Assembly (NCBI GenBank): GCA_026770705.1
Contig: JANJGN010000039.1
Span: forward strand, 10,478,001-10,542,000
Direction: 5' to 3'
From: Isurus oxyrinchus
Lineage: Eukaryota
Length of the DNA stretch: 64,000 nucleotides
Positions 1 through 42,099 of the stretch are shown here, piece by piece. The position numbers and the translations under genes were made by a program. Every line of letters begins with the position of its first letter. Positions within the stretch are counted from its first letter, which is position 1. Under the pieces are notes generated by a model. The model was not told the DNA's origin. It was given only the letters and a program-made list of their open reading frames with translations, and made no database searches.

Positions 1-829
1 GCCATTGCCGTGTCGGATCTCCTGGTTGTTTGTGCTGAAGTCATTCTGAAGAGTACGCTGGATATGTATATTCGTGTTTTGTTCTTGACCATGGGCACAG
101 TGTGCCATCTCTCTGTAACACTGATTATGTAGTCCCATCAGCCTCTGTGTGGTCAACAGTGGTGTTTCCCTTCAATCGTTTTGTGGCCATATGTTGTAAG
201 AAACTGCGAAAAAATATTGCACTGAAACAACAGCGGTAGCTGTCATAACAGTGGTGAGTGTTTTGAGATTTTTGATAAACATTCCATGGTACTTTGCGTA
301 TGAATCTGTGTATATAATGGACAATGTAAATCGTGGTTGCGTCCTAATAGAGACATTTTTCATTTCTGCTGAATGGGCCGCATTTGAATTTTTTAACCTT
401 ACCATAACCCCATGTGTTCCTTTCATTCCAATCTTGTTGCTAAATGTTTTGACGGTGAGACGTATTTTGGCAGACAGTAAAGTTCGCAGGGGTCTCCTCG
501 GTTGCAGTAATGGAGAACACCACAAGGACTCTGAAATTGAAATCCGAAGATAGTCCATTATTTTACTCCTCAGTATAACTGACAGCTATATATTGCCCTG
601 GACAACTCCTGTTATATATATTATCTCTCTGCATGTAGCAATCACTTCAAATTCTGACGCAAATGAGCTTAAGTCAGTTGGATTCATGCTAGGGGACCTC
701 AGTTGCTGCACAAATGCATTCATTTATGTGCTGACACAGGCTAGGTTTAGGGTGGAGCTGAAGAGCGGAATGCAGTACCTTGTGAAACTGAGCGCAAAAC
801 TATGCAATTTACACCTCAAAACCCATTGA
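1..829 (+). pseudogene. Class-A GPCR (GPR139/142-like chondrichthyan family) pseudogene, exon 2, 5'-truncated by the window edge
   Basis: Collinear with 37138-37969. Reads AIAVSDLLVVCAEVILK...(NRF)...INIPWYF...CVPFIPILLLNVLTVRRIL...SCCTNAFIYVLTQARFR. Relative to copy 2 it has a 1-nt deletion near 127, a 1-nt deletion in the A-run near 210, a premature TAG at 551-553 (AAG in copy 2) and DRF changed to NRF. Confidence 0.9.
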
Positions 830-1003
830 CCTTTACAGGCGGACATAAACATTGTGCCCTGAAACAACTCATGTTAGAATAACGCTTGTACCAACGTCTA
901 ATATCCTACTAAAACAGGTATTCAACTTAAAATGCTCTGTAAAAATATAATGAACTCTTTTTGATAGTACACACTACTCAATGGTGAATTGTAAGTTGTG
1001 ATA

Positions 1004-1040
1004 ACAATAATAATAAATAATAATAATAATAATAATAATA
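1004..1040. repeat. (AAT)n microsatellite
   Basis: aataataataaataataataat... It is much shorter at the paralogous position ~38148. Confidence 0.9.
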
Positions 1041-2424
1041 CTGAACAGCTCCTGTTAGTGTTGCAGAGTTTGAAAGGATGAATTGTGATGCCAGGTTTTT
1101 ACAGCCTTGTGTTCATTGGAACAGTTGTTCTGATCAACAAGGGAAGACCCAAGCATCAGCAGCTGGATCACGACAACTCGACAAATGCAACTTAGTCAAA
1201 CATGGCAAATTTTCTACAACGTCTATTCTGGGGCAATTGGTACATAGGGGGAATTTTCAGAACATGTTTCACGAAGTCTGGCACCCTCCAAATATTGAAC
1301 AGTTGCGCAATGAGCTGCTTCTCAGATTTCCATTTACCTCACATGATTGAAATAAGGAAGGCCTGGTCATCACGTGTTTTGGGAAAGGACGGGCAGTGGC
1401 AGAATTGATAACTCATTACCATGATCCAATGGGCTGAAAGACGACTCCATGTATTGGATTCTGAACTTTTAAATCCGATTTCCCTCCGATTCATTTGAAA
1501 GCGCAAATTGCTCATACTTGTTTTTTTCACGATTGCTGAGGCTATCTCCTCCCCACATGTTCATTCACAACACTCTCTGTTCCATGTTATCCGGTCTTTT
1601 CACACACACACACGCACCAAATGGCTGTTATCATAATTTTCGAATATTTCCATATGTATGACTTGATCCCATATGTATGACTTGATATAGCGAGTGACGC
1701 TTCAACCAGGTATCTGCACGAATTCCCAGCCAAGAAACGTCTGACTACACATGGCTCCAACATTAAATTCCTTCCCTGTATACCTACACATATTGAATGT
1801 GAAAAATTATAATGTAATTCTTCTCGTCGCATATTCTTATAATTTACTGAACTTAAATGCCGCGCATAGAATGCAACCATATACAGTCTACAGCACAGAA
1901 GCAGATCATTTGGCCCCTCTTTTCCTTATTGTCTCTCTTAAGGAAGATGCAGCCGGCAGTCACTATCCGCCTTCTCCCTGTTATGTGGGTCATTCGCTTT
2001 TCAAAGATATTAATACAATTACGTCTTGACGATTCCTAATTCACCACACTAATCACCCGGTAAAATGATTGTCCAGAAAAACTGCCAATTAAAGTGGCAT
2101 TAAATAGAAAACTACAACCACTGCCCTTGAATAAATGAACATTAAAAAGATGACAGGTTAGGTCATGGCATGAGGGGCATAGTTGTCAAGAAAAACAATT
2201 ATTGCCAATCTTCAATTGCTCTTACAGAAAACCATATGTGATCCGTCTTTTTGAGCAGCTACCGTGTTTCTGACATCTTCAAACAGGCTGCTTAGGGTCT
2301 GAATTACTAAATGCCCACACCTCCAGCTCAGCTACAACTCTTTTCTAAATCTTTGCTCTTTCTTTTAGGCACGTGCACTTTCTAAATATACATCTCGACT
2401 GCTCAGCTCCAAGTCATTTTAGTT

Positions 2425-3400
2425 CCTGAGGGAACATCAGTTCCTCAGGGTAATGTCCAAGACACAACGATGTTTAGCTCCATCAACAATGAACTTCTCT
2501 CCACCTTAAGGTTGGAAATGGGGATGTTCGCTGATGATTACGCAATGCTCAACTCAGTTCGTCACTCCTGAGATAATAAGGTAGTCCATGGCCAAATGCA
2601 GCATGTTCAGGCTTTGGCTGAGGAGAGGGAAAGGACATTGACACCATACAAGTACCAGACAATGAATATCTCCAAAAGAGAAAATCAAACCATCGACCAT
2701 CAGCATTCAATGGCATTACCATCGCCGAAAGTCGCACTAACAGCATTGTAACGCTAATCAATGACCAGAAACAGAACTGGATTGGCCATATAAACAGAAC
2801 GTCTACAATTGCAGTTCAGGGGCAAGGAATCCTGCGAGTAACACACCTCCTGACTCCCCAATTCCATTCCACCATCTACAACACAGATGATAGGATTGTG
2901 ATGATATACGCCCCACTTGATTGGGTGCGTATAGCTGCAAAGCATCCAAGATGCACGACAGCTTCTGGGATAAATCAGCTGTAGATTGACACCAACTCAA
3001 TAAAAGTTGACTCCCTCCACAACGATGAACAATAGAAGCAGTGTGTTTTAACTGAAAGGTGCACTGCCTGAATTTCCAAAGTAACCTTTGACATTACAGT
3101 CCAAACCCACGACCGGAACCATCTAGAAGAATAATGGGCAGCAGATATATGGGAACACAACGATTTGGATGTTCCCCTCCAAGCTACACACCAGCCTGTT
3201 TGAAAAGATATCCCTGTTCCATCATTGTAGTTGGGTCAAATTCCAGGATTTCCCTCCTTATGAGCATATTAGCTGTACGGTTACCTGCTGCGATTCAAGA
3301 AGGGAGCTCACCACTATATTCTCAAGGTTGCCTACGTCTGGGCAATGAATGCTGTGAGAACGATTGATGCTAAAACCCCCTTAATCAATAATAATAAATA
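2425..3400 (+). mobile_element. Non-LTR retrotransposon (CR1/L2 group) 3' fragment: RT C-terminus and tail
   Basis: Degenerate VPQG...MFADD motifs (gttcctcaggg, gatgttcgctgatga) and the tail ctcaccac..ttctcaag..gggcaat(a)aatgctg shared with copies at 9060, 21213, 39550 and 45060. Confidence 0.75.
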
Positions 3401-3409
3401 AGTATTGTC

Positions 3410-3830
3410 TCTGTGGCTGCACAGATACTGCACTTCCCAGTCTGACAGCTCTGTTGTACTGCAGCAAAATCAATGTCCTAGACAATACTTCCTGCTTCTT
3501 ATAAAGCTATGCTCTACCTATTCAGCTTCCTTACTTTTATTAATCTCTGCTTTGGGAGCAGAGCGCCTTTTACTTTCCTATCTGTGTTTTGATTATCTAG
3601 CTCCCAATATTTTTAAATCTGTCATGGGGGAGCAGTGACTTTCTAATCCGTGCTTTGAATATCTCGCTGTAGCTCCTTTTAAATATCTCCTCTGGCAGCT
3701 CAGCTCCCGCTCTTTTACCTTTCTGCCCTAGCAACTCAACTACTCCTCTTTTTTTAAATAAAAATCACTTGTTCGTGATCAGCTCCCCACTCTCTCTAAA
3801 TCTCTGCTCTAACTCTTCAACTGCAGCATT
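3410..3830. repeat. Degenerate ~37-38-bp tandem repeat (ctagcagctcagctccc..ctctt..taaatct)
   Basis: Recurring cagctc / taaatct motifs. Related units occur at 2250-2420 (the array is split by the LINE) and in the duplicate at 40520-40930. Confidence 0.55.
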
Positions 3831-4829
3831 AAAGGAATACTTTAACCTGCCCTGACTGCCAAGAGTCTAGCCGGGAATTAGAGACAGTTGGGTTTAATTA
3901 AGAATGGTCACTGGTTTGTAACACCATGCCTTAAAATAAGAATATGCTTGCACAAACTACTCGCATTTTGATATCACAACAGAGAAAATTAATGAATTAA
4001 TGAAGTGGACTTTGAGATATTAATTCACAACTAATCGCAGATAAGGCTGCTTAAGAACATTTACGCTCATTAAAAATGACAGAGACGCGAATTGTGCTAG
4101 GGGGAGGAGTCGCTTTCCAATTGCATCAAGTGCAGTAATGCACAGAAAACAGGAACTGTTTATTATCGTTTTCCAGCAGTCTGGATGATGGTAGCCGTTG
4201 GCGTTCCCAAGGAATCCGGGTTTGTTTTATTTTTGGTCGACATATACCAATTGAATCTTGGATTACAGCACAACGTCTGAAAAAAGTGTTAGTGATGCAG
4301 ACATGGTGGGAGTTAAACATGTGAGGATGATACGAACCCGTTGCAATTGGACATGGAGAGACGACCAGAATGTGCAGTGGATTAGCAGATGCAATTTAAT
4401 GTATTGCAATGAAAATAATAGAATTTGGCACAAGTGGTAGTGAGGGGAAATAGAGATGGAATGTCACTGTCCCAAAGAATGTGATAGAATGGAGGTACCA
4501 AGGTGCATGTGCTTCGATGTAAGAGTAAAGCAGACAGAGCCGTGCCTTGGGTTTGGAAAATTGTGGCGACCGGGCCTGGCACCGCACATTGAGGGCAGAT
4601 ATGGACTGCGCTGCAGTGACCTGTGAAAGGGGGTGGCCATTCCTACCTGGGTAAGTTTGAAGGAGACTGTTTAAGTGACACAAATGAGCGGCCCTATTTG
4701 TATTTAGGATTCAATGGCTAGCATGAGTAGAGACAAAGAAAATGGGAACAATATTGCTTGGATGCAAAGAAAAGACAGAAAAAATAACGAGAGAATGATA
4801 AGACCTTGAAATATTCTCCGGAAAACATC

Positions 4830-13198: not shown

Positions 13199-13566
13199 GC
13201 CTTCTGCCCCAATAAGTTCAGTGAGTGATGTCACTACCCGATTGTGTGTGAATATGAAAGCAGCACACTCTCGGAGATTAGAATAAGGACACTTCAACTC
13301 CAGCATCCTGATACCAACTCTCAGCAAATCCACTAAAAATAATGCAAAATCTCATCTTGCGGATCGTTTTAATGCTCATTCAGCCCAGTGCCATTGCTGG
13401 AGCGATGTCCCCATTGACTCACAGAGATATATGCTTCCACATTTCTCCGATGACTCAGCAGCCAGTACTCTTAAAGAGTGATTTTTTAAAAAAATATTCA
13501 TAATTGAAAATCATGTTTTCATCTGCTGAATTAAGATGACTGTGCGTGAGGCTGGAAGATTTAATA

Positions 13567-13668
13567 TTAAACAGTGGAGGCCTCTTCTTTCCGACTGAGG
13601 GCTTCCAGGTTCAACGATATATAGTCTATCTCCTCATTGTCATTCGCTAGCACTTCAGAATAGAGTCT
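13567..13668 (-). CDS. Duplicated ITIM-containing exon, possible alternative terminal exon (RLYSEVLANDNEEIDYISLNLEALSRKEEASTV*)
   Basis: Near copy of exon 15033-14908 including its acceptor (cattcatcacag). Phase 0, ends in TAA. Confidence 0.5.
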   Translation of the reverse strand, partial: RLYSEVLANDNEEIDYISLNLEALSRKEEASTV

Positions 13669-14285
13669 CTGTGATGAATGACACACAGGGAATAATTCCG
13701 CTGTGTGTTCAAAACGAGGCGGCCTGGCGTTAGATGTGTGACTGCTGTGAGAGTTGGAGTATACATTATCACTCCTCCTTTCCTGTTGGTAATTTGTCAC
13801 GAGCTATCTTGATGAGCGTAAGGCGAAAAGCTGTGACAGTGGGTCTATTTTAGCAGCAGTACTCCAGTCCTGTGCTACTAAATGAGCATTTATTGTAAGA
13901 ACCTAATTGCTAACTATTCTGCTGAGCCTATCAGATGGATAAATGCCGACGAAAAAATTATGCTTATGGTTCCAACTTGGATATTTGTATCAAAGCGACA
14001 CTGAAATTGTAACTTTTTGAATAATTTCAATCTGGATTATTGCCACCAAATATAGAAAAAGTTCATTCAAAGTTTATTATAAACACATTCAATTAGCGTA
14101 GAATATATTGCAACATGAAAAAGTGCTTCAAGATGATATACGTGCAAATTTATAACCTCTCAAAAAATCTTTAAGTACCACAGTTCATACAGGTCCCGTA
14201 AGTGGCGATATTCGCACTTAGTCAAAGTGTTTTGGGAACATGCAGGCGGAACAGCTTACAGAGTCTAACGCGGTGCATTGTCCAT

Positions 14286-14369
14286 TCATTGCGGTTTATC
14301 CGAGTCAACTCTCACAGGTGCGTAGGTGACATCTTGAAACTCGCACTTTGCTAATTCAGAACGCTTCTT
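14286..14369 (-). CDS. IgSF receptor last coding exon (KKRSELAKCEFQDVTYAPVRVDSDKPQ*), ITIM VTYAPV
   Basis: Acceptor gtttctttccttgcag, phase 0, stop TGA. Minus-strand AATAAA at 14073-14078 and 13889-13894. Confidence 0.75.
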   Translation of the reverse strand, partial: KKRSELAKCEFQDVTYAPVRVDSDKPQ

Positions 14370-14489
14370 CTGCAAGGAAAGAAACACAATGGCACAAGTG
14401 GGTAAGATCACCTTTCTCTCGATTCGCCTTTTATCAACCTCATGCTCTCCTCCCTTCCTCTGGCAATCCATTCAACTTCACCCCGATGT

Positions 14490-14735
14490 TCTCTCCCCGT
14501 CTCTCTCTCTCACTTTCTCCCTCTCCCATGCTATCTCTCGCTCTCGCTCCCCAAGCCTCATGTTCTGTCTCTGTCTCTCTCATTGATTCCCTCCCTCTCT
14601 CACTCTCACATCCTCGACACCCCACCTCCATGTTCTCTCGCTGTCTCTCTTACTCACCTTTTCCCTCTCCCACGCTCTCTCTCTCTCTCTCTCTCTCTGC
14701 GTCTCCATGTCCTCGGCGTTTTTTCTCTGTCTCTG
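14490..14735. repeat. (CT)n-rich low-complexity tract
   Basis: Direct inspection. Confidence 0.85.
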
Positions 14736-14907
14736 CATCATTTTTATTTTCTTTGTATTTCCTAGGGTCCTGCTCTATTTTCCTTTACCCCCAGCTACAA
14801 ACTTTTTGACATTTCCCCCTTTTAGTTTTCCTTCTGCCTCTTTACGCCCACTTTTTCATCACACAAATCAAGCACCCACCGAACAGAAATATAATTTTTT
14901 TCCCTAC

Positions 14908-15033
14908 TTTAGCTGGGAAGTTGGCGCCTGGTTCACAGGTGGAGGCCCCATCTTTCCAACTGAGGGCTTCCAGGTTCAAAGATGCATAGTTTATCTCCCC
15001 ATTGTCGTCATCTAGCACTTCAGAATAGAATCC
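14908..15033 (-). CDS. IgSF receptor cytoplasmic exon (GFYSEVLDDDNGEINYASLNLEALSWKDGASTCEPGANFPAK), ITIM INYASL
   Basis: Acceptor ttattcatcgcag, donor GTAGGG, 126 nt, phase 0/0. Confidence 0.75.
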
Positions 15034-15278
15034 CTGCGATGAATAACACACAGGAAATAATAAAAGCAAAGGGAACAAGGTGATCGCAACAGGCGCAAGC
15101 TAAATTTAAATTCCTGAAAGCTATATGTTCTTTCCATGAAACAGAGCAGTCTAATAAATTGATTTGAAGAACATATAATTTGGATTGAGTCATAAGGACA
15201 TGACGGGAGGAATATAACTACGAAGATGACATTTTGCAGATTTATAATATCATTGGTTAGAGCACTGTGGGCAATTCT

Positions 15279-15625
15279 GGGGAGGCAGTGGCCTAGTGAC
15301 CAAGTGCTTGGAAAGGTAATTCAGAAGCCTTGATTAACACTTACTGAATTAACTGATCAGGCTCATCCAAGTTCACTTAATAAATGTGGAAATGGAATAT
15401 GGCTGCATGAAGCTACCATTGTTTGTTCTAGCAGCCCATCTGGTTCACGCATGTCCTCGAGGGAAGGAAATCTGACGCCCTCACCTGGTCTGGCCCACCT
15501 GTAAGTCCAGACCTAAAAGCAAAGTGATTGGCCCTTACCTGCCCTCTGAAATGGCCAAGCAAGCCGCTCATTTTAAGGGTGATTTCGGGAGGCCTTGATA
15601 ATGGCACCCACAACCCATGAAAAAC
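15279..15625 (+). mobile_element. Deu-domain SINE (SacSINE1/AmnSINE-like)
   Basis: tRNA-like head ggggaggcagtggcctagtg and Deu core cccatctggttcac..atgtcct..gggaaggaaatctg..cctggtctggcc..gccctctgaaatggcc. Confidence 0.8.
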
Positions 15626-15659
15626 TTATTTCTGAAACCTAAACACCAGACTTCAGGAA

Positions 15660-16150
15660 TGAGTTAATGACCTCAGAAAAAGGGTAAAGCATAAGTGCGT
15701 TCATTGGTAAATTAAGGGGACGTGGGGCTTTCTTGGAGATAAAATACACTAAAACAAATGAGTCATTGCTTCGAACTATGAGTTTAACTGAGATATGTTT
15801 CCACGGCGATCACATTTTCAACAGAGTCGATAGAGGGAAGATAATATTCCCGCTAACTACTGGGCCATCCTACAACAGCAGGGAGTGGACTTTATTTGGA
15901 GAATTAAATAAAACTGGAGGGCAGAAGAGCATAGATTGTTGTTACCTTGTTTTTCATTCAGAGAGTTGTTAGAATCTGGAGCATACCATCTGATAACGTG
16001 ATTGAAGGCAACCCCGTGCAATGTTTCAAAAAATATTTTGAATGAGGAATTTACAGTGATATGGGCACGGTTCTAGCATGGAGGAGTAAGTGAGGCTGAT
16101 AGCCCTTGGAGGATGGGCAGAACGGCCTCCTCCTTGGCGGTTCGCTTCAA
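15660..16150 (+). mobile_element. CR1 LINE 3' fragment
   Basis: Degenerate CR1 C-terminal sequence (ttttcattcagagagttgttagaatctgga) and 3' tail. Confidence 0.6.
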
Positions 16151-16556
16151 CAATGGTGCGATCATGCACTGATTTATTGTTTCATTTCTTCTATCGAATG
16201 TTCCTTTTGAATTTCACTCACCCTTCCTCAGCCTGTCCCCTGTTCTTTTGTCCCTCCCTATGTCACTCTCTAAGTCACTCTCGCGCCTCCTGTCTTTCCT
16301 TGTGTTTCCAAATTTCAGGCTTTTCATCTTTTTTCCCGCTCTTGCTCGGTCTCCCACCCTTTTCCTCTCTGTCAATATTCATTCTCTCTTCCTTGATCTG
16401 CAATTCCAGGGTTCCCTGTTCACTTTTTGCCCCCTATACCTCAATCTCTACCTCCCACTCAGAATATCATACCTCCCACTCAGAATATCATATGTTTGCG
16501 TCCATTTTTCCGTGAGTTGGCTGAGAATAATAGCAATATTCAAAATAGGTGCTTAC

Positions 16557-16594
16557 GTTCATCTCCAGGTTGGAGGAACCACTCTGGTTAAGAT
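16557..16594 (-). CDS. IgSF receptor cytoplasmic exon (YLNQSGSSNLEMN)
   Basis: Acceptor cttgtctttccttttcag, donor GTAAGC, 38 nt, phase 1/0. Confidence 0.7.
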
Positions 16595-16789
16595 CTGAAA
16601 AGGAAAGACAAGTGCATTTTGATTCAATTATTGCATGCTTTCATGGAGCGTAAATGGTCTAGCAAGTTCCTTGTATATTGACATTAAGCGGTGTTACAGA
16701 TTTGTTGTTGTTTATAGGAACGACGTGAATTTCAATTCCATTTTAAACACATGACTTGCAGGCAGTCAAACACTCCTGCTCTGCGGATA

Positions 16790-16992
16790 CTGGTGATCTG
16801 AAACAAGAATAGAAAATGCTTGACAAACACTGAGCAGGTCTGACAGTATCCATGGAGAGAAAGAAAAAGCGAACCTTTCGAATGCGTGTGGCTCTTTCCA
16901 GAGCTCTGAAGAAGAGACATACTGACTCCAAACGTTAACTGTCCCTTTCTCTCCACAGATGCTGTCAGACCTGCTGAGTCTTTTCCACTTTT
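16790..16992. mobile_element. Penelope-like element terminal palindrome with degenerate hammerhead motif
   Basis: Inverted repeat aaaatgct..cagcaggtctgacag..catggagaga versus tctccacagatgctgtcagacctgctgag, with central CTGAAGA-GAGAC..GACTC-(C)AAACGTT. Confidence 0.65.
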
Positions 16993-17371
16993 AAATAGAT
17001 CCCGTGTGTTTGATGTGCCAGCCCACGAATAATTCGATTCCCATATCATCCAGTTTTCCTGTAACCACGACTTTAATAGAACAGAATACTGGGTGTGTAG
17101 TATAACACTCTAAAATGGATCCAGTGTGTTTGATGACCCATGAAAAATTTGATCCCCAATGATCCATGTTTTTTGCAACCAAGTGATCAACAATCTTTAG
17201 AAATGTTTCTAATTCTATACTAGTTCTACCAAATAAATTCTATTTAAGTATAGAAGGGAGAATATTGGAAATAACTACATAAGCCATTCAGACAACCGTG
17301 ACGGACAGTGTCAGAAAGAGCAATGATCCTTGATCAAGAAATACAGTCAATGTCAACATTACTATACTTAC

Positions 17372-17424
17372 ACAGGAGATCACCATCTTGCTGATTTGCC
17401 ATTCCACTTGCAGACGCTGTACAC
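17372..17424 (-). CDS. IgSF receptor cytoplasmic exon (CTASASGMANQQDGDLL)
   Basis: Acceptor ctttctttcattttaaag, donor GTAAGT, 53 nt, phase 2/1. Confidence 0.7.
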
Positions 17425-17854
17425 CTTTAAAATGAAAGAAAGTTACTGATTTGTTAGAAGTATTCCCCCCAAAATCATGTTTATTTTCTAATGCACAAGT
17501 TTAAGAAAATATTTAACTTTTACTGAATTGAGTAATATCGTGTGGTGCATTTTGCTCACAACTATAAATACTGGAGAACTAAAGCAATGTCATTACCTCT
17601 CAATATTTAGTCTTTTTCTCTTTCCTGCAATAAAGCAAAAAGTTGGAAAAATGTAGGGCACTTGATAAAGTTTTCCAAATGCTCAATATTCTATGGATTT
17701 AATGCATTGAAAGGTTTTATGAATTTGCTCCTAATGTAATGAGGATATATGACTAATACACATGCTATGGTGTAGGAAACCATGAAATTAACCGATAATA
17801 TCCTCCAACCCAGTTTCCTCTACTTGCGTCTCAGTATCAATAGCTTCCACTTAC

Positions 17855-17865
17855 AAATTCAGTGC
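17855..17865 (-). CDS. IgSF receptor 11-nt micro-exon (ALN-L)
   Basis: ttttattgccttcag|GCACTGAATTT|GTAAGT, phase 0/2, exactly the phase needed to join its neighbours. Confidence 0.6.
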
Positions 17866-18119
17866 CTGAAGGCAATAAAATATCCCGTGTGCTCCAGAGC
17901 ACTTGGGCTACACACATAAATAGCGTTGAAATACGTAATGTAGTGTTGGTGTTTATAATCCAGATCTTGACACTTCACGTGATCTAATTGCCTCTTTCTA
18001 GCCTTCCCACTTATCACTCTCTCTATTACCCCTTCGCTCTTGAACACATCAGGTCCGCCTTTATTAATGGTGTTATCAGTTTTGACAAGAAAAGTATAAA
18101 AAACAGAGAGAAATAAAGA

Positions 18120-18520
18120 GAAGACTTCGAGTTCTCGCCTTTCTTTGGGTGGTGGAAGTGCTCCTGAATTGTTTTACAGAAGGAATGGATCAAAAGCGTT
18201 CTCGAAGTGATGCATTTTGTAGATGGCTTTAACTTTTCGGAAGCTTCCAGTTAGCTAGTTAAGTTCTGAAAACTTTCGCTGAAGCACCACCATCAGTGAC
18301 GAAGGCGAATGGCATGGAATGGATTCTGTAGTGGGCACAGCTGTGATATGTGGCTGTGCGACTAGGAATGTTTCAGTCTTCAGATTGTTGAAAATGGAAC
18401 GTGGCACACCAACGTGAAACGACCGGATGACTAGGGAGAATAGTTTGGCATCTGTATATTGGCGAATGGAACAAAGAGCTATCTGCAGTAGGGAAGGGGA
18501 ACCAGCAGGATCAGTGTGCA
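18120..18520 (-). mobile_element. L2 LINE RT fragment
   Basis: The minus strand reads QYTDAKLF..(YADD-like)...NNLKTETFLV. Confidence 0.5.
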
Positions 18521-18624
18521 AGATGAGTCATATTCGACTCGAAATGTTATCTCTGTTTCTCTCTCCGCAGGTGAAATCACAGAAGGCCGTGAAGAGGAAC
18601 AAAAGGGATGATTTGTATTAGGGT

Positions 18625-19175
18625 GTAGGACAGAACACAAAAAAGGAGCAGAGGTAGGCCATTCGGCCCCTCTAGCCACCCGAGCCATTAAATAATATCA
18701 TGGTTGATTAGCCCCAGGCCTCAACTCCTCTTTCGTGCCAGCTCCTCATAGCCCTCAACTCCCCAATATTTCAAAAATCTATCTACATCATCATTAAATA
18801 CTTCCAACGGTTTAGACTCCACAACTCACTAGGCTAGAGATTTCCAAACATTCACTACCCTCTGAGAGAGGAAATCCACATGCAGCTCAGTTTTAATTAA
18901 GTGGCCCCTTATGCTGTAACTATGTCTCCTAGTTTGAGATTCTTCCACGAGTGGAGACATCTTCTCAACATTGACACTGTCAAGCCCCCTCAAAATCTTG
19001 CAGGTCTCAATAAGATCACCCCTCATTCTTCTAAACTCGAATGAATAAAGGCTTAAACTCTTTAGCCGTTCTCGATGAGTCAACACTTCCATCCCAGGAA
19101 TCAGCCCATTGAATCTCTTTTGAACTGCCTCCAATGCCAGTGTATTCATTCTTGAATAAAGGGGACCAAAGATTA
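18625..19175 (-). mobile_element. CR1 LINE 3' fragment
   Basis: LALEAVQKRFNGLIPGM...RRMRGDLIETCKILRGLD...FLSQRVVNVWKSL plus CR1 3' UTR. Confidence 0.9.
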
Positions 19176-19249
19176 CTAAGTCCACTAACAATGCAACTAT
19201 GCTATCGCCTCCTCTGCAAAACAGCGAAGTGAAGCTGTTGCTAGGTCCC

Positions 19250-20040
19250 ACTCAGTGCCCAGAGCAACATGTTTAATTTGAAGGAGTTAAGTGGAGTGGA
19301 AGCAAATGTTATTTAACGTCACGGAGATTTGTTTGTCCTCCATACAAGGAGAAAGAATGGGGAGGGCACACAGGCCGCCCTGGTGGCGAATTGACCTACA
19401 GAGTGATTGGACGTCCATGGCGAAACGGAAGCAGAGCCAGAAACTGTTGAAGAGACGGAGGGCATCAGCAGAGCAACGGATGTTGGTAGGGAGTGATGTA
19501 TAAGAAATAAATAGAATCGAGATAGGAATAATTGGTTAGGAGTAGTTTGAAACAATAGGATGAAACCAGATACGTCGCCTTTTTAGATTGGGGTGGAGGT
19601 AGAAGCTGCTTATTTAAGGAGGTTGGGCCATGTGATTGGAAGGCATGGAGGGAAGATCTGCACAGGAGATCAGGTCAGTGATGGCCCTAGATCGGGTGGC
19701 TTCTTTTTATGAAGGAGTGTCATGATCCAGGGGGCGGTAGAAGGCAGTAGTGGAGAGTTGGCCTTTCAACTCTGATATCGATATCCTATCCTGGTACAAG
19801 AAAAAATGTTACGAGCTTGGCCTAAATTTTTGACTTTTGGTTTGGAGCTGACAGACCGGAGTACTGCTTGTTCAGCTTAATATCCCTGCAGAGAAATTGA
19901 AAAAGTTGCTGTCAATACAACACTTCCGAATGAGAAGCTCAATGCAATATTCGGCCAAGGGAAGGTGTCAGATGTAAGTTTGTATGTCCATTTGAATGTT
20001 GAGGTCAAAATATATTGAGGCTTCTTGTCAAATTTCTCCT
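19250..20040 (-). mobile_element. Penelope-like retroelement RT fragment
   Basis: The minus strand near 19360-19425 reads FAMDVQSLCRSIRHQGGLCAL, matching the Penelope-type motif FTMDVQSLYTSIPH. Confidence 0.65.
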
Positions 20041-20054
20041 TTCAACTCATCCTC

Positions 20055-20433
20055 CCATGGGATGTCGTTTTCCCTGGCAATGCCTGAGTTTGTTGCTCAT
20101 GCCTCATTGCTCTTGAACCGAATGTCTAAGCAATTTCAGAGGACATTTAAGCGTTAGCAATATTGCTGTGTGCAGGAGTCACATGTAGGCGAGATCAGGC
20201 AACGATGACCGAGTTGCTTCCCTAAAGAGCATTACTGGACCATTTTAAAATATACATATATAAATTGTAATCGATTGTCGATTCCTGGATAGCAGTACTG
20301 ACACTGACTTAAAATTCTAAAATTATTAATAGGTTTACCTCAAACTCCAGCAGCTGCCGTGGTGGAATCTGAGGCCGTGCCACAAGCCTGGGCGTGTGGT
20401 TTATGACCCCTGCCGCAAATTACACTCTACGCC
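20055..20433 (-). mobile_element. Deu-domain SINE (second copy)
   Basis: Reverse complement of the Deu core (atttcagaggaca..ggagtcacatgtaggc..ttccctaaa) and tRNA-like head. Confidence 0.7.
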
Positions 20434-20440
20434 GGTTTAC

Positions 20441-20464
20441 CAGGAGTTGAAGCGGTGGCCGTTT
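20441..20464 (-). CDS. IgSF receptor 24-nt micro-exon (KRPPLQLL)
   Basis: ctttgtcttcag|AAACGG...CTCCTG|GTAAAC, phase 0/0. Confidence 0.6.
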
Positions 20465-20621
20465 CTGAAGACAAAGCCAGAGAGGGCAGGTGAGAGCAAA
20501 CCGTAAGTACCCAGGGAGTGGGGACATTCGATGGGGTGAGACGAAAGGGAAGGGGCGTGGAATGGAGACGGTCACTGTTGTCCGCCAGTAATGAGGGTGA
20601 TGTTCCAGTTGCTTTACTCAC

Positions 20622-20641
20622 ATCCTCTGCATGAAAGTGAC
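20622..20641 (-). CDS. IgSF receptor 20-nt micro-exon (SHFHAED)
   Basis: cttaattgaaag|GTCACT...GAGGAT|GTGAGT, phase 1/0. Confidence 0.65.
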
Positions 20642-20806
20642 CTTTCAATTAAGACAAGGCCTCATTCCTCAACATGTAGTCATCCATAGCTGCTGACAAT
20701 TTTAATGCTGCAGTTGAGTTTAGGGTTGTTTGCAGGTTCCCGCCAACGTTTCCTCCTTTTTTCATGAAAAATGGTAGTTATTTTTTTTTTCGTGACGAAC
20801 ACTTAC

Positions 20807-20908
20807 TTCTTCTGGCGAACAAGCACGCCGTCATTGCCACAAACGTTGCCAGGATTATTTCGACTGCACACCCCAGGACAGCAATTAGAGGGAAAGTGGT
20901 CCCTGGCC
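20807..20908 (-). CDS. IgSF receptor transmembrane exon (PGTTFPLIAVLGCAVEIILATFVAMTACLFARR)
   Basis: Acceptor ttttattgctctccag, donor GTAAGT, 102 nt, phase 1/1. Encodes a hydrophobic helix followed by basic stop-transfer residues. Confidence 0.8.
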
Positions 20909-21212
20909 CTGGAGAGCAATAAAACGTTGAACATGTGTAAGATTAAATACACAACCATGTGCGTGTTAATGTAATTAAATACATCAATAGCTTTGGAAAT
21001 TCTTCCCAGCTGATTGTGTGCTAAACGCCCCTTAGCCAGTGTAAACTCGTGCACCCTAACAGAATCCATTGGACATTTTTTCCGAACAACTTAATAAAAT
21101 CAGTAGCAGGGGATGTTAAACGGGCAGCGTTTAAAATTTCTTCCACGATTTTCCTCTTGGCTGCCTGACCTGGCGGTCTTAACGGCCACATGATAAAGGC
21201 TAAACCCACGAG

Positions 21213-21490
21213 AACTACCATCTAGAAGGACAAGGGCAGCAGATAGATGGGAACACCGTCACCTGGAAGTTCCCCTCCAAGTCACTCACCATCCTGACTG
21301 GGAAATATATCGGCCGTTCCTTCACTATCATTGGGTCAAAAACCTGGAACTCCCTCCTAACACCACACCACCGGGACTGCAACGGCTCAAGAAGGCAGCT
21401 CACCACCACCTTCTCAAGGGCAACTAGAGATGGGCAATAAATGCTGTGGCGAGACAGCGAAGCCCACATACCCTGAATGAATGAAAAAAC
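21213..21490 (+). mobile_element. 3' tail of the CR1/L2-group LINE family (relatively young copy)
   Basis: accatctagaaggacaagggcagcag...ctcaccaccaccttctcaagggcaactagagatgggcaataaatgctg. Confidence 0.8.
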
Positions 21491-21998
21491 AATATTGACG
21501 GCAAATGTTCTGGGCTGGTTTTACTGTTTTTTTTTTTAATAACACACAGTCCCTAGACAACACAAAGTACTTCGTCTTCTCTTAATTCCGTGATGCAAAT
21601 TATCAGTCTTGATCCTAGGATATTCCTGATAAAGCAAGTGAAGGCAAGAAGCCACGTTATTTAGAAATGAACCAAAACTGGAGCTCAATCAGAATGTCTG
21701 CCTTAGATTGTGAAAGCATAGACAATAGCAGATGCTTCTGGAACTGTTCAGAAAAAAACAAGTTTTAATTAGATGTTTTTGACAACAACACTTGCACACA
21801 CACACACAAAAAAGGGACAAAATGGTTTGGGACAGTGAAATGGCATGCTGTAGAGTCACGGTGAATTGTACTGTTGGAGTTGGGACAAATTAATTTCAGT
21901 GAAATTTTAATGAAATTTCATTTCACTGAAAGGACGGGACAACAATTTCAATGTCTTTTGTAACAGAGCACCACAGAACCTGTTGTGTAAGCAGCCAC

Positions 21999-22335
21999 AT
22001 GGAAGTAAGCGATAATAGCGCCCTTGATGAACTCCAACATTATCGAGCATTACCAAGGCGTAAAGGTTAACAATCTGTGCAGAGACCATGAGAACGGAAG
22101 GTCAGAGACCCGTCGGGCGAGAACCAGGTCCCAGATGTACTTTTAAAATCGGAATAGAACTTAGAATACTGGAAGGAAACGATCATCCCCACTGCTTTAA
22201 AACCTCCACTGGAGGTGTCTGAATGAGTTTGATAAAGCAACAGTCCATTTCTCACGGGTTGGGAGAACAGGCAGTTTGCAAGGAGCACTGTAGAGTCGAA
22301 GATAGCTGTGCCTGGGCTGATTTTGTGGTGAATTC
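21999..22335 (-). pseudogene. Ig V-like domain exon (CD2/SLAM/CEACAM-like) with one frameshift
   Basis: Acceptor gccccttcag. Reads IHHKISPGTAIFDSTVLL...WFSPDGSLTFRS../..NLYALVMLDNVGVHQGRYYRLLP. It is 337 nt; removing 1 nt near 22070-22090 gives 336 nt, phase 1/1. The donor (GTGGCT) is weak. Confidence 0.55.
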
Positions 22336-22631
22336 CTGAAGGGGCATCATGGCATGCAGAAAATGGAGGAGTGCCTAAGTGTGTGAGGAGGCGATTCAAA
22401 TGCATCCACTAATAGGCAATGCTCCTTGGTGAACCTTAGTCCAAGAGAGTGCTCAGACTTGAATTGATGCTGCCAATTATCAGGAGCACGTGTCCTGTTT
22501 TGCGGGCATGTAGAGTCCGTTGGATGATATGCAAGGGGAATGGAAGGAGACAAAGGGAATTCTGCCAGTCCAGTGAGCATTATGGAAATGAGTCAAATAA
22601 CGGTTTGTGGCGAATCAAGCTGACTGCTTAC

Positions 22632-22712
22632 TCTCTGCAGTCCATGCAAAACGAACAGTAAGTAAAACGGATAATCAGACACAATGTCCCCAGTTGACGA
22701 CATCAAATACAT
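22632..22712 (-). pseudogene. Putative signal-peptide exon, disrupted
   Basis: The phase-1 frame ending at a GTAAGC donor reads ...HCV*LSVLLTVRFAWTAE. Nearby ATGs (22712, 22703) are out of frame. Confidence 0.4.
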
Positions 22713-22769
22713 TTGGAGATGTCGACTGGGTTGTAACTAATTTATATTTAAAAAATTAAATTTATATCA

Positions 22770-23115
22770 GCGAGCGTGTCTTCAAGGTACTAGGGCTATG
22801 AAACGTTCAATAGTTGTGACTTGAGTATTGTGTGCATTTCTGGTAACCTCTTTACAGAAAAGATGCCATTCCATTAGACATGGTACAGAGGAAATAAACG
22901 AGGATATTTCCAGACCTGGACAATTGCAACAATGAAGAAAGACTGGATGGGCTGGAGTCGTTCTTCTTGCAAGAGAGGAGGCTGAGGGGAGATTACATTG
23001 AAATATACAGAATTGTGAGCAGCCTGGATCGAATGGATGTGACGGACCTATTTACTTCAACCAGTGACTAGGGGAATTGGGTTTAACGGGGTTGTTAGGA
23101 ATTTTAGAGCAGAGA
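22770..23115 (+). mobile_element. CR1 LINE 3' fragment, cut by the LTR
   Basis: gagaggaggctgaggggagattacattgaaatatacagaatt (RRLRGD..EIYRI). Confidence 0.7.
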
Positions 23116-23118
23116 GTG

Positions 23119-23653
23119 TGTTGGGGAAGAAATTAAGTAAGAATTTATGGTAAGGGAAAATTTATTGAAAAGGAATTAATTACTTTAAATCTCCAGGCAG
23201 CCAGTGCTATCATGTATATTAACACTTAAAGATTACCAGATGAACTTTGCTCAGGCTTAGGGCCTGTTACCAACAGAAAGGCCTCAGGAGCCACACTGGA
23301 GGCAGAGGATGGCTAAGACATAGAGTAATTGTGCTCTTCAACAGATAGGGGAAGGACGGATGGTTCTAGTTTAGGTAGGACGGAAGGTCTCTGCCTGGGT
23401 AAAAATAGGGACATGCGATGAATGTACCTGTTACCAGAGATGCCTGTTTAATGTAAACGGATATAGTGACGAGATGGGAATCTGGAAACTGTTCTTGTAC
23501 GTGACCAATAATGTATAAATATGTTGAACGCTTGTAATTTAGCAGAGTGTGATCTCAAGCTGTATTGAGATGACTCTCCCCTTGCAATTGCTGGAATAAA
23601 CGTTCGTGACCTGTACCTGAGGCCCCTGTGGTCGGGTTGTCAAAGTGACAACA
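23119..23653 (+). mobile_element. LTR of an endogenous retrovirus or Gypsy element (5' LTR)
   Basis: TGTTG...CAACA inverted termini, CCAAT at 23505, TATAAA at 23514, AATAAA at 23595, and a PBS 3 nt downstream. Confidence 0.75.
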
Positions 23654-25479: not shown

Positions 25480-25936
25480 NNNNNNNNNNNNNNNNNNNNN
25501 NNNNNNNNNNNNNNNNNNNNNNNNNNNNNNNNNNNNNNNNNNNNNNNNNNNNNNNNNNNNNNNNNNNNNNNNNNNNNNNNNNNNNNNNNNNNNNNNNNNN
25601 NNNNNNNNNNNNNNNNNNNNNNNNNNNNNNNNNNNNNNNNNNNNNNNNNNNNNNNNNNNNNNNNNNNNNNNNNNNNNNNNNNNNNNNNNNNNNNNNNNNN
25701 NNNNNNNNNNNNNNNNNNNNNNNNNNNNNNNNNNNNNNNNNNNNNNNNNNNNNNNNNNNNNNNNNNNNNNNNNNNNNNNNNNNNNNNNNNNNNNNNNNNN
25801 NNNNNNNNNNNNNNNNNNNNNNNNNNNNNNNNNNNNNNNNNNNNNNNNNNNNNNNNNNNNNNNNNNNNNNNNNNNNNNNNNNNNNNNNNNNNNNNNNNNN
25901 NNNNNNNNNNNNNNNNNNNNNNNNNNNNNNNNNNNN
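25480..25936. other. Assembly gap (N run)
   Basis: Run of n characters. Confidence 1.
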
Positions 25937-29599: not shown

Positions 29600-29870
29600 G
29601 AGGGCAACGCTGGCAATGCCAGAATTTATTGCCCAACTATAACTCCCCTTGTGAAGTGGGTGGTGAGCTGCTGCGGTCTTTGTGGTGTTGTTACATTCAC
29701 GTTATTATTAGCAGGGGTTGGGGTTTGTGGTCCTTTAATTTGACACGGAGACAGTGAAGAAACGGCGATATTTTTGCGAACCAGGGCGATGAGTGGCTGG
29801 GAGACGAACCTTCAGCATGTGGCATTCCCATGATTATTTTGCCTTTGTCTTTCTAGATCGTAGCGGCCAT
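29600..29870 (-). mobile_element. LINE 3' tail (same family as 21213)
   Basis: atttattgccca..gtggtgagctg..ctttgtctttctagat is the reverse complement of the tail. Confidence 0.65.
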
Positions 29871-31950: not shown

Positions 31951-32854
31951 CGGGGATACGTTGGGCTTGGGGTTACAAATTATGGTTGTGCACAAATCAA
32001 CTCCAGCCAATGGTCCACAGTGCGTCGTGAATGTGCACTTTTGAGTTTTTGATCAAGGTGAAACCGACCCCATTTAGCACACTGGTTGTCTCACACAAAA
32101 CGATTGAGGGAAGCCCCAATGTGAAGGTGGAATTCGTCTGCACGAGGACCGTGCCCTGGTCAATCATATCCATCATTGAATGGACACATGTATCTGTGGC
32201 GTGTAGGTTGGTAGAGCGAATTCAATTAGGTTTTTGCACCTGTTTGTTTTCCTGTCTTACAATTCACCAGGATAAGCCGTGTTGTTATGCATGATCGCTG
32301 CTGCTGAGACATATGACAGATGTTAGCAAAGTTCCTTCGTTTGTGCATTTGACCTCGAAAGCCTGGAACGGCAAGAGCAGGAGAGGCAGGAGAACACTCT
32401 TAATTACAAAATCCTTTCCAAGTCACACACCACTCTGACTTGGAGATAAATCACCGTTCCCTGACTGTCACTAGACCAAAAACCTGGAAATCGTCACTCG
32501 TAGCATTGTGTTTGTATCCACTTCACATGGGCTGCAACACTTTAAAACCGTTACTGTCAAGAAGAATTAGTGGAAAAGGAAATAAAAGTGCTACTCTTGA
32601 CAATATAAGCAAAGAAAATAAAATGTTGCATGGTGAAGAATCTATGAATGTTGATGTCCTTTTTCTATTGAAATGATGGCCCGGAAGATTCTTTTGTTCC
32701 GGCTCAACAAAGATTAACTACAAAATGCATATTTAAATGTAAATTATTTTGGAGAACACTGGTCCCAAACTGAGAACGTATGTTTTGAATTCACTTCTAA
32801 ATATCTAAATATTTAAGCAAAAGGATTGGCTGGAAATTTCGACCGAAACTCGCA

Positions 32855-35900: not shown

Positions 35901-37063
35901 TACTGTCCTTGAAAGACAAGCAATTCCCTTCTGCCCTTTCCACAACAAAATGATTTGTTCTGCAGCCGTTCAATTAATGGGAACTCTGTCCTGCCTACTC
36001 AGAAGCAAAATGCTAGTTATGTCCTCACGAGAAGCACATCTTCGAATTGCTCATTCACTATGCTTTGCAAGAAATGTGCCCCTATGGCCAATAACTATTG
36101 CTCACTCAATCTGATAGCATGTCACCGGTCCTAGTCTGCCATTATACTGCCCTCTTGATCAGCACTGACTGTACCCATTCTGCATAGCAATGTTGCTTCA
36201 CATTTTCTGCAATGCATTAGCAATGTGTTCATCTGAAATAATCCTGCACAATGCCCAGCCAGCATATCAATCTCACGTTACTCAGCCTGACTTAAGACAC
36301 TGGACTAATCAGCTCTCATCCTCAAATAAAACTTCTCACTGGGAACCTGCTTAAGAATGTCACCTTGTATTGATTCAAATTGTACTGCCACTGTGATGAC
36401 GCTTGTGAAAACTTGCATTTGGCCTCATCTATGCTGGTCTTTTATGTAGCTCAGTGGTCTTATATGTTCCTGTTTTTTTTTTTTACCTTTCCATCTTTGC
36501 TTTCACTTGCATTCACGGTATGTTCGTGTCCCTGGGCAATATTTAATCTTCAAACTGTAAGTCCTGTAGTACAGTAATCCTTCCCAGTGCCTATCGCATC
36601 TCTAGACTGCCCAGCACGAACTGCATGTCTACCTCTTCTGGAGTATAATTTTACTTGGCCCAGATTCTATGTTGTGCATTCCTTTCACATTTCACGTTGC
36701 ACCAACACACATGAATTGAATTTTTACACCACCCATTTTCCTTTTAATATTCACAATGCCAAGCCGTTTGTGTGCAGTCAAATTGTCCGGGTCAAATTCG
36801 CCCTCAGCAATCTTAATCTTAACTGTACAATAGTTGTCCAGTCTACATTGATGATTTTCATTCCAAAAGACGAATTATCATCTAATGTTTCTCTTCCCTA
36901 AGCACTTTCAGTAGGTCCAGTTTACATTTAGAACAACTTCGCCTTGGAAAGCTAACTGTGGCATATTTGGGTCAAATGCACAATCCTTTGCTACAACAGG
37001 AAGAAAATTAATAAAGTTCTTCTGTGTCATCAATCTCCTGCTTTCTCTGTCCTTCTCTTACAG

Positions 37064-37969
37064 TTAATGTGGTTGCGATTGTGATTCTTTCCCGAAGAAA
37101 GTGTGGCCTCTCCAAATGTATTACCCACTATATGATCGCCATGGCCATGGCAGATCTCCTGGTTGTTTGTGCTGAAGTCATACTGAAGAATACACTGGAT
37201 ATTTATTTCGCTGTTTCATTCTTGACCATGAGCATGCTGTGCCAGCTAAATGTGACACTGATTAATGTAGTCACATCAGCGTCTCTCTGGTTAACAGTGA
37301 TGTTCACCTTCGATCGTTTTGTGGTTATATGTTGTAAGAAGCTACGAAAAAAATATTCCACGGAGACAACAGCAGTAGCTGTCATATCAGTGGTGAGCAT
37401 GTTGAGTTTTTTTTATAAATATTCCCTGGTACTTTGCGCTTGAACCTGCAGAAATAATGGACAATGTAAATCGTGGTTGTGTCCTAAAACAGACATTTTT
37501 CATTTCTGATGAATGGGCCGCATTTGCCTTTTTTTCCCTTACCTTGAAACCATGCGTTCCATTCATTCTAATCTTGTTGCTAAATGTTTTGACGGCTAGA
37601 CATATTTTGGCAGCCAGTAACATTCGCAGGGGTCTCCGCTGTTGCAGCAATGGAGAACATCACACGGAGTCTGAAATAGAAAGCCGAAGAAAGTCCATTA
37701 TTTTACTCTTCAGTATAACCGGCTGCTTTATATTGCTCTGGACAACTCCGGTTATATATCTTATCTCTCTGCATGTAACAATTACATCGAATTCTGGCGC
37801 AAATCACCTTGAGTCAGTTGGATTCATGCTAGGGGACCTAAGTTGCTGCACAAATACATTCATTTATGTGCTGACACAGGCTAGGTTTAGGGAGGAGCTG
37901 AGGAGCGGAATGAAGTACCTTGTGAAACTGTGCGTAAAATTATGCAAATCACAGCTGAAAACCCATTGA
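37064..37969 (+). CDS. GPCR (GPR139/142-like) exon 2, with a single +1 frameshift at T8 37407-37414
   Basis: Acceptor ccttctcttacag. Reads VNVVAIVILSRRKCGLSKCIT...AMADLL...FTFDRFVVIC...PFILILLLN...SCCTNTFIY. Removing one T gives a 326-aa 7TM protein with exon 1. Confidence 0.88.
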
Positions 37970-41975: not shown

Positions 41976-42099
41976 AAATCTAGAAACATTTTAGAAGTCA
42001 TTCGACAAATCTGCAAAATATTGAATTAATGCACTCCAGCGAGTGTACCACCAAGGCTGAGGAAGTGCGCATTAGTGCAAACTGTGCATAGTCTGATGA

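What the first reader, a model, noticed from the sequence alone, without database searches (positions are those of the whole stretch)
14286..22712. Hidden multi-exon ITIM-bearing Ig-superfamily receptor gene on the minus strand
Seen in sequence: eight AG..GT-bounded segments (20908-20807, 20641-20622, 20464-20441, 17865-17855, 17424-17372, 16594-16557, 15033-14908, 14369-14286) splice with matching phases (1/1, 1/0, 0/0, 0/2, 2/1, 1/0, 0/0, 0/stop) into one open frame: a TM helix plus a 118-aa tail with LLYLNQ, GFYSEV, INYASL and VTYAPV. Upstream lie a V-domain-sized exon and a signal-like exon, and AATAAA follows the stop. Established: (I/V/L/S)xYxx(L/V) ITIMs recruit SHP-1, SHP-2 or SHIP. 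Inference: a lineage-specific inhibitory leukocyte receptor of cartilaginous fish that I cannot assign to a named family. The ORF track misses it entirely.
Basis: partly seen in the sequence, partly recalled or inferred. Interest (0 to 1): 0.85.

Follow-up and report, generated by a model that had tools for sequence, protein, structure and literature searches.

The report
Shark ITIM receptor tail, ectodomain missing
This shark DNA holds the membrane anchor and inhibitory signalling tail of an immune-type receptor related to a two-Ig-domain gene of the basking shark, but no outer, ligand-binding part could be found next to it, so it is probably a truncated gene copy.

Summary
Only five are supported as exons. 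A whole-library search with exon 7 found one true relative, XP_078390326.1 (371 aa, "immunoglobulin superfamily member 1-like", Cetorhinus maximus). Its TM and tail match segments 1, 5, 6, 7 and 8 in order. Segments 2-4 have no counterpart there. One 28-nt exon (17624-17597) takes their place and has the same phase effect. Spliced contigs from three runs of one sample show this chain, TM-28-53-38-126. They differ from the window by about 10%, so they come from an expressed paralogue, not this locus. The upstream "V domain" got no support from Pfam, Atlas, AlphaFold2 or a homologue search. The leader-like ORF leaves the wrong phase. No relative of the Ig or leader exons of XP_078390326.1, and no other Ig exon, was found up to 64000. 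Most likely this is an orphan TM plus ITIM-tail module of a little-annotated shark receptor family. It is still fully intact, so it was lost recently or is still in use. Interest is modest.

The parts
20807..20908 (-). TM exon (102 nt, phase 1 in and out). It carries a glutamate in mid-helix that the relative and the expressed paralogue lack.
   Evidence: AG/GT borders and open frame. 75% identical over 36 aa to P0004 residues 229-264, E 2e-10. Paralogue contigs lie on 20806-20904 in X1-X3. Hydropathy 2.49.
17597..17624 (-). 28-nt cytoplasmic exon (encodes KRKRLNIE plus two split codons).
   Evidence: Acceptor score 6.0, donor score 6.8. Translation. 7 of 8 residues equal P0004 residues 265-272 (by eye). 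The paralogue contigs carry 25+3 letters between the TM exon and the 53-nt exon (tables 5 and 5c). By eye these match the exon at 22 of 25.
17372..17424 (-).
   Evidence: 16 of 17 residues equal P0004. Contig pieces lie on 17372-17426, and the joint 16594|17372 is exact in X1 and X2.
16557..16594 (-).
   Evidence: 10 of 12 residues equal P0004 and in the right order (E 0.61 taken alone). Joints 16594|17372 and 15029|16556.
14908..15033 (-).
   Evidence: Whole-library phmmer hit to P0004, E 4.6e-07, 68% identity over residues 1-41. tblastn E 1e-11. Contig pieces lie on 14911-15029.
14286..14369 (-).
   Evidence: 68% identical to the C-terminal 31 residues of P0004, which ends at the same residue, E 2e-7.
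14073..14078 (-). AATAAA polyadenylation signal, about 208 nt after the stop
13574..13696 (-). Partial duplicate of the 126-nt exon with about 28 nt of its upstream intron. The acceptor is kept, the frame ends in a stop, and ATTAAA follows at 13565.
   Evidence: 86% nucleotide identity over 123 nt. 77% identical to P0004 residues 304-334. ATTAAA.

Best explanation
The locus is the 3' module of a receptor gene: one TM exon and five cytoplasmic exons of 28, 53, 38, 126 and 84 nt. It is a paralogue of a shark-specific family whose only annotated member is a leader, two C2-type Ig domains, TM and tail protein of the basking shark.

Shown:
- Homology and exon order.
- The same exon chain is spliced in an expressed paralogue of the same species label.
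- All six exons and their ten splice sites are intact.
- Two canonical ITIMs are kept.

Inferred: if this tail sat on a receptor, Src-family kinases would phosphorylate the ITIM tyrosines and SHP-1, SHP-2 or SHIP would dock there and damp activation (established ITIM biology).

My reading of the locus itself: it has no ectodomain exons in the visible 64 kb, so it is most likely a 5'-truncated (orphan) copy. Because the module is so well preserved, the 5' part was lost or displaced recently, or the module is still used in some way.
For: -: 5 of 1.84 billion representatives reach E <= 0.001. One of them, P0004, is a vertebrate IgSF protein matching residues 1-41 of exon 7. The other four are long repeat proteins matched in 4-7 stretches (sequences), which I judge spurious.
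- P0004 is XP_078390326.1.
- P0004 has Ig_3 at 27-99 and Ig_2 at 130-204.
- TM, 53-nt, 38-nt, 126-nt and last exon match P0004 residues 229-371 in order. Nothing matches residues 1-228 at E below 1.
- the 28-nt exon.
- spliced contigs in 3 of 4 runs show TM-28-53-38-126. Unique intron bins have zero depth, so these runs behave as RNA.
- no Ig hallmark and no convincing phase-1/1 Ig-sized exon from 20909 to 64000.
- an opposite-strand GPCR ORF at 37015-37966 bounds the upstream space.
-, tables 2-3: the TM exon is covered only by contigs that carry the paralogue's letters.
Against: - Intactness argues against an old dead fragment. A rough neutral simulation gives P about 0.01-0.06 that 139 codons and 20 splice nucleotides stay intact at 5% substitutions per site (the indel ratio is my assumption).
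- Shark introns can be long, so Ig exons may lie beyond the window.
- A 457-N gap (25480-25936) could hide one exon.
- Only four small runs from two samples were laid, tissue unknown.
- In X1 a short second contig carries the window's own letters at 14948-14969.
- The length limits (204-649 aa) would miss a short or very long product of this locus.
Confidence: 0.5

Rival explanations
1. Complete, functional inhibitory receptor gene. Its leader and Ig exons lie outside what can be seen: more than 43 kb upstream, inside the N gap, or too diverged to recognise.
For: All six exons and ten splice sites are intact and the ITIM tyrosines are kept, despite about 10% divergence from the paralogue. A poly(A) signal is present. 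A short contig in X1 carries window-type letters.
Against: tblastn with P0004 finds nothing for residues 1-228 anywhere in the 64 kb. There is no Ig hallmark and no open phase-1/1 Ig-sized exon. The tail introns are only 0.2-3.2 kb. A GPCR ORF on the other strand and repeat insertions lie upstream. The gap is flanked by repeat-like sequence. No locus-specific contig lies on the TM exon.
Confidence: 0.3
2. One reading: a leader at 22712, a disulphide-less V-like exon around 22335-22000, the TM exon and an eight-exon, 118-aa tail form one chimeric receptor gene.
For: Coordinates, borders and phases are as stated. The V-like ORF has an acceptor score of 4.3 and all-beta predicted secondary structure. 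The region is not a repeat within the window.
Against: - Segments 2-4 are absent from P0004 and from the paralogue's transcripts. They cannot co-exist in frame with the 28-nt exon.
- The acceptor of segment 2 scores -3.2.
- V-like ORF: 0 Pfam families at E <= 10, no Ig lead in the Atlas with recognition 1597, pLDDT 35.6, no homologue of 62-198 aa at E <= 10.
- It needs a frameshift or weak donors, scoring -0.8 and 2.6.
- The only good donor of the leader ORF (22632, score 5.5) leaves phase 0, not phase 1.
Confidence: 0.05
3. An ectodomain-less signalling subunit. A short leader is spliced straight to the TM exon, giving a small membrane protein with a mid-membrane glutamate and an ITIM tail. 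It would pair with receptors that carry a basic TM residue, as an inhibitory mirror image of DAP12 or FcR-gamma.
For: The window's TM has a glutamate where P0004 and the expressed paralogue have alanine (by eye). The tail is intact without any Ig exon nearby.
Against: There is no transcript evidence and no conserved leader. The one ATG-led ORF upstream has the wrong phase at its good donor. The glutamate may simply be drift. No relative with such an architecture was found, though short proteins fall outside the length range.
Confidence: 0.04
4. Chance: AG..GT-bounded open segments that merely look like a gene.
For: 46 candidate micro-exons exist at the model's weakest thresholds, so phase matching alone proves nothing.
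Against: Ordered matches to P0004 for five exons plus the 28-nt exon, and exact splice joints in paralogue transcripts.
Confidence: 0.01

Closest known systems
XP_078390326.1, 'immunoglobulin superfamily member 1-like' [Cetorhinus maximus] (P0004, 371 aa; an automatic RefSeq name)
   Same: The TM helix and the whole cytoplasmic tail match in order: 67-94% identity per exon, the same C-terminus, and three shared tyrosine motifs.
   Different: P0004 has a leader and two Ig domains, and the window has none. The window has Val-Glu where P0004 has Ala-Ala in the TM helix. The tyrosine at the exon 5/6 junction is window-only. No study of this protein turned up in my searches.
LRC/FcR-type receptors (LILRB, KIR, FcRL, Fc-alpha-R)
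   Same: What it works like: a type I receptor with C2-type Ig domains and a multi-ITIM tail encoded by several small exons. The ectodomain of P0004 draws Atlas leads to KIR3DX1, A1BG, FcAR, FcRL5 and IGSF1-like clusters at 0.91-0.93. Its best PDB sequence hit is LILRB4.
   Different: The PDB hit is not significant (E 0.016). The tail has no detectable relative outside P0004. This locus has no Ig exon. Akula et al. 2014 (PMC4016189, passages read) reported no FcRL or C2-only LRC homologues in sharks.
CEACAM1 long and short tail isoforms
   Same: A 53-nt cytoplasmic exon whose skipping would shift the frame. Here that gives a stop two codons into the next exon. The tail combines an ITIM with a YSEV-type motif. 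The CEACAM1 details are recalled, not from any call.
   Different: No N-domain, no sequence similarity found, and no evidence that the 53-nt exon is ever skipped. PMC5112662 (passages read) says only that CEACAMs exist in cartilaginous fish.
CD2/SLAM family
   Same: That family has a V domain without the canonical disulphide, and its tails carry tyrosine motifs.
   Different: The V-like ORF has no support. There is no C2 exon. None of the four tyrosine motifs has Thr at -2, as an ITSM requires.

Membership tests
XP_078390326.1-like shark receptors | TM exon and cytoplasmic exons similar and in the same order | tested here: met
   five exons, E 1e-11 to 0.61, in order on P0004 residues 229-371. 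28-nt exon. Whole-library E 4.6e-07.
XP_078390326.1-like shark receptors | Leader plus two C2-type Ig domain exons upstream of the TM exon | tested here: not met
   No tblastn match to P0004 residues 1-228 at E below 1 in 64 kb. No Ig hallmark. No open phase-1/1 Ig-sized exon with Ig features.
ITIM-bearing inhibitory receptors (functional class) | At least one (S/I/V/L)xYxx(I/V/L) motif in the cytoplasmic tail of a type I membrane protein | tested here: met
   INYASL and VTYAPV. GFYSEV and LLYLNQ do not fit the consensus (Gly at -2; Gln at +3).
ITIM-bearing inhibitory receptors (functional class) | Ligand-binding ectodomain on the same polypeptide | tested here: not met
ITIM-bearing inhibitory receptors (functional class) | Tyrosine phosphorylation and recruitment of SHP-1, SHP-2 or SHIP | not testable with these tools
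   Needs biochemistry
ITIM-bearing inhibitory receptors (functional class) | Expression of this locus (in leukocytes) | tested here: inconclusive
   One search listed no RNA holder. In one search only contigs about 10% different lie on the exons, plus one short window-type contig in X1. The tissue is unknown.
LRC/FcR-like (LILR, KIR, FcRL) | C2-type Ig domains significantly similar to those families | tested here: inconclusive
   Tested for the relative P0004 only: Pfam Ig_2 and Ig_3, Atlas leads at 0.91-0.93, best PDB E 0.016 for LILRB4, AlphaFold2 model too poor to search (pLDDT 46.6). This locus has no Ig exon.
CD2/SLAM | N-terminal V domain followed by a C2 domain | tested here: not met
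   The V-like ORF has no Pfam, Atlas or homologue support and a low-confidence fold. No C2 exon between 22000 and 20908.
CD2/SLAM | ITSM TxYxx(V/I) in the tail | tested here: not met
   None of the four tyrosine motifs has Thr at -2.

The most novel reading that the evidence does not exclude
The module is not a relic. It would be an ectodomain-less inhibitory signalling subunit: a short extracellular stub, a TM helix with a glutamate that pairs with basic residues in partner receptors, and a double-ITIM tail. That would make it an inhibitory counterpart of the ITAM adaptors DAP12 and FcR-gamma. It would have arisen when a two-Ig receptor gene lost its Ig exons.
Probability: 0.04. Interest if true: 0.8.

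Novelty: new member of a known kind. Interest (0 to 1): 0.3.

Why it matters
The locus itself adds little. It is one more copy, probably truncated, of an ITIM-tailed immune-type receptor.

Two things are worth keeping:
- The family it belongs to has a single automatically named protein in public data. No paper in the searched library covers it. Its C2-type Ig ectodomain looks LRC/FcR-like (leads only). Akula et al. 2014 (passages) stated that such receptors are absent from sharks, so the family could bear on when LRC/FcR-type receptors arose.
- The tail module stays fully intact without an ectodomain and carries a new charged TM residue. That is an oddity that cheap RNA work could settle.

Tried and rejected
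They have no counterpart in P0004 or in the paralogue's contigs, the acceptor of segment 2 is weak, and they cannot share a frame with the 28-nt exon.
- V-like ORF 22408-22070: Pfam none, Atlas none, AlphaFold2 pLDDT 35.6, homologue search none among 2 candidates in the 62-198 aa range only. I did not run a fold search because both models were too poor.
- Leader-like ORF: wrong phase at its only good donor.
- Search for paralogous exons inside the window: only the exon-7 copy.
- Family expansion: P0004 tail and whole protein found only P0004 itself, within 204-649 aa. PDB gave nothing at E <= 0.01.
- Earlier scan notes by sequence: blank.
- The look-up of sequencing runs listed no RNA holder. 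I laid the four largest same-species runs anyway.
- A rough substitution count against the paralogue (about 7 replacement to 4 silent, by eye) is too small to call selection.
- Supplements of papers were closed and not seen. Those of PMC5112662 list CEACAM tail exons and could bear on the CEACAM comparison.

Full report
**Observation**

I read 14000-23500 on the minus strand and checked each claimed segment by coordinates. All 8 segments follow an AG. The 7 internal ones precede a GT, and the last ends in TGA. The stated phases chain without a stop. Each exon was translated on its own. AATAAA lies at 14078-14073.

Phase matching is weak evidence on its own. I used rough splice matrices of my own (recalled frequencies). 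At the weakest scores the model uses, 46 open AG..GT segments lie between exon 1 and exon 7, and 13 remain at a stricter acceptor cut-off. The acceptor of segment 2 scores -3.2.

**Outside evidence**

A whole-library phmmer search with the 42-residue exon 7 gave 5 proteins at E <= 0.001 out of 1.84 billion. Four are long repeat proteins matched in 4-7 stretches, which I regard as spurious.

The fifth, P0004, matches residues 1-41 at 68% identity (E 4.6e-07). It is XP_078390326.1, "immunoglobulin superfamily member 1-like" of the basking shark. It has Pfam Ig_3 at 27-99 and Ig_2 at 130-204, followed by a helix that AlphaFold2 places at 234-278.

tblastn of P0004 against the window hits, in order on the minus strand:

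| Window feature | Coordinates | Identity | E-value |
|---|---|---|---|
| TM exon | 20909-20802 | 75% | 2e-10 |
| 53-nt exon | 17438-17373 | 82% | 8e-6 |
| 38-nt exon | 16592-16557 | 10 of 12 | 0.61 alone |
| 126-nt exon | 15033-14908 | 67% | 1e-11 |
| Last exon | 14381-14289 | 68% | 2e-7 |
| Copy of the 126-nt exon | 13665-13573 | 77% | 8e-9 |

Between its TM and the part matching the 53-nt exon, P0004 has ten residues. Eight of these align to the translation of a 28-nt exon at 17624-17597, and 7 of the 8 are identical (compared by eye). That exon has acceptor score 6.0 and donor score 6.8. Both 28 and 55 leave remainder 1 when divided by 3, so the downstream frame is the same. The two alternatives cannot be combined in frame.

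**RNA**

No RNA run was listed as holding the stretch. I laid the four largest runs with the same species label on 14905-20904. In X1, X2 and X3, which come from one sample, single contigs of 729, 733 and 1014 nt lie in pieces on four exons:
- the TM exon (20806-20904)
- the 53-nt exon (17372-17426)
- the 38-nt exon
- the 126-nt exon (14911-15029)

The joints are 16594|17372 (exact in X1 and X2), 15029|16556 (3 letters between) and 17426|20806 (25 letters between). By eye, those 25 letters read on the minus strand match the inside of the 28-nt exon at 22 of 25. With the 3 flanking letters absorbed into the neighbouring pieces, they make exactly 28.

Unique intron bins have zero depth, and the longest records are about 15-16 kb, so these runs behave as RNA. 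X4, probably DNA, has none of these contigs.

The pieces differ from the window at 11 of 110, 2 of 55 and 13 of 99 letters. They therefore come from a paralogue, not from this locus. By eye, the replacement differences shared by the three runs turn the window's residues into those of P0004 at 3 of 3 TM positions and 3 of 4 positions in the 126-nt exon. This includes the window's Val-Glu becoming Ala-Ala. The expressed gene is therefore P0004-like, and the window is the more diverged copy.

I stopped it and report only the by-eye reading.

The TM exon is covered only by the paralogue's contigs. In X1 a second short contig (depth about 6) carries the window's letters at 14948-14969, but not at 14980-14999. 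That is no proof that this locus is expressed.

**Upstream**

- The V-like ORF (22408-22070; exon from 22335) got 0 Pfam families at E <= 10.
- It got no Ig lead in the Atlas, with recognition 1597.
- Its AlphaFold2 pLDDT was 35.6.
- A search limited to 62-198 aa found no homologue.
- Its possible donors score -0.8 and 2.6.
- The ATG-led ORF at 22712 has one good donor (22632, score 5.5), and this leaves phase 0. Both the V-like ORF and the TM exon need phase 1.
- P0004 residues 1-228 find nothing at E below 1 in the whole window.
- A six-frame scan for Ig hallmarks finds none.
- None of the 15 open phase-1/1 candidates upstream looks like an Ig domain.
- Upstream lie a SINE-like element (21194-21495, five more copies), LINE-like ORFs, an N run (25480-25936, left alone) and an opposite-strand GPCR ORF at 37015-37966. 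That ORF belongs to a 4.8-kb duplication, 1-4824 against 37138-41978 at 81%.

**Reading**

Six exons (102, 28, 53, 38, 126 and 84 nt) encode a TM helix and a tail of about 109 aa with two canonical ITIMs. This module is homologous to the tail of a two-Ig shark receptor and is spliced the same way in an expressed paralogue.

The locus shows no ectodomain, so I take it as a 5'-truncated copy (confidence 0.5). Against an old relic, a rough neutral simulation gives only about 0.01-0.06 for keeping 139 codons and 20 splice nucleotides intact at 5% substitutions per site (the indel ratio is assumed). Either the loss is recent, or the ectodomain exons lie outside the window (0.3), or the module is used in an unusual way (0.04 for an ectodomain-less ITIM subunit with a TM glutamate).

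The mechanism is inferred from established ITIM biology and was not tested: phosphorylated ITIMs recruit SHP-1, SHP-2 or SHIP.

**Comparison and novelty**

P0004 has no other relative of 204-649 aa in 5.8 billion proteins. It has no significant PDB relative by sequence (best is LILRB4 at E 0.016). The Atlas leads for its ectodomain point to KIR, FcAR, FcRL, A1BG and IGSF1-type clusters at 0.91-0.93.

I searched papers three times on this question. I saw listings and abstracts, and found none on such a shark family. In passages of PMC4016189, Akula et al. state that no FcRL or C2-only LRC homologues were found in sharks. Passages of PMC5112662 say only that CEACAMs exist in cartilaginous fish. 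Supplements were closed.

The scan has noted many other ITIM receptors in this genome on other DNA. None was shown to share this tail.

**Verdict**

This is a new, probably truncated member of a known kind. Interest 0.3.

Noticed in passing
window 1-4824 and 37138-41978: A 4.8-kb direct duplication at 81% identity. Each copy carries a rhodopsin-type GPCR ORF on the + strand. The copy at 37015-37966 is split over two frames (Pfam 7tm_1 on both pieces), so it is probably a pseudogene. The receptor tail lies between the two copies.
   Followed up: partly
window 13574-13696 (minus strand): A duplicate of the 126-nt ITIM exon lies about 380 nt beyond the gene's poly(A) signal. It keeps its acceptor and phase, ends in a stop, and is followed by ATTAAA at 13565. 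It could be an alternative terminal exon or a relic. At several residues it is closer to the basking-shark protein than the main exon is.
   Followed up: partly
window 17372-17424 and 16557-16594 (minus strand): Skipping the 53-nt exon would put a stop two codons into the 38-nt exon. That would give a tail without ITIMs, a possible long/short tail switch as recalled for CEACAM1. There is no evidence that it happens.
   Followed up: partly
window 20859-20863 (minus strand, TM exon): Mid-membrane Val-Glu where both the basking-shark relative and the expressed paralogue have Ala-Ala. A charged TM residue is unusual in an ITIM-tailed protein.
   Followed up: partly
window 21194-21495: A SINE-like element with five further copies in the window (3095-3356, 29620-29863, 32363-32492, 40194-40510, 46507-46743) at 66-72% identity.
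   Followed up: no
window 16905-17104 and 18505-19104: Very high contig depth in all four runs (up to about 20,000). These are highly repeated elements, and expressed in the three RNA-like runs, sitting inside the introns of the tail module.
   Followed up: no
window 14948-14969, run X1: In X1 alone, a second short contig of depth about 6 carries the window's own letters at four variable sites of the 126-nt exon. It could be a third paralogue, an allele, or faint expression of this locus.
   Followed up: no
window 14440-14760: A GA-rich low-complexity block with an internal 71-nt repeat (14479-14549 and 14623-14693), inside the last intron.
   Followed up: no
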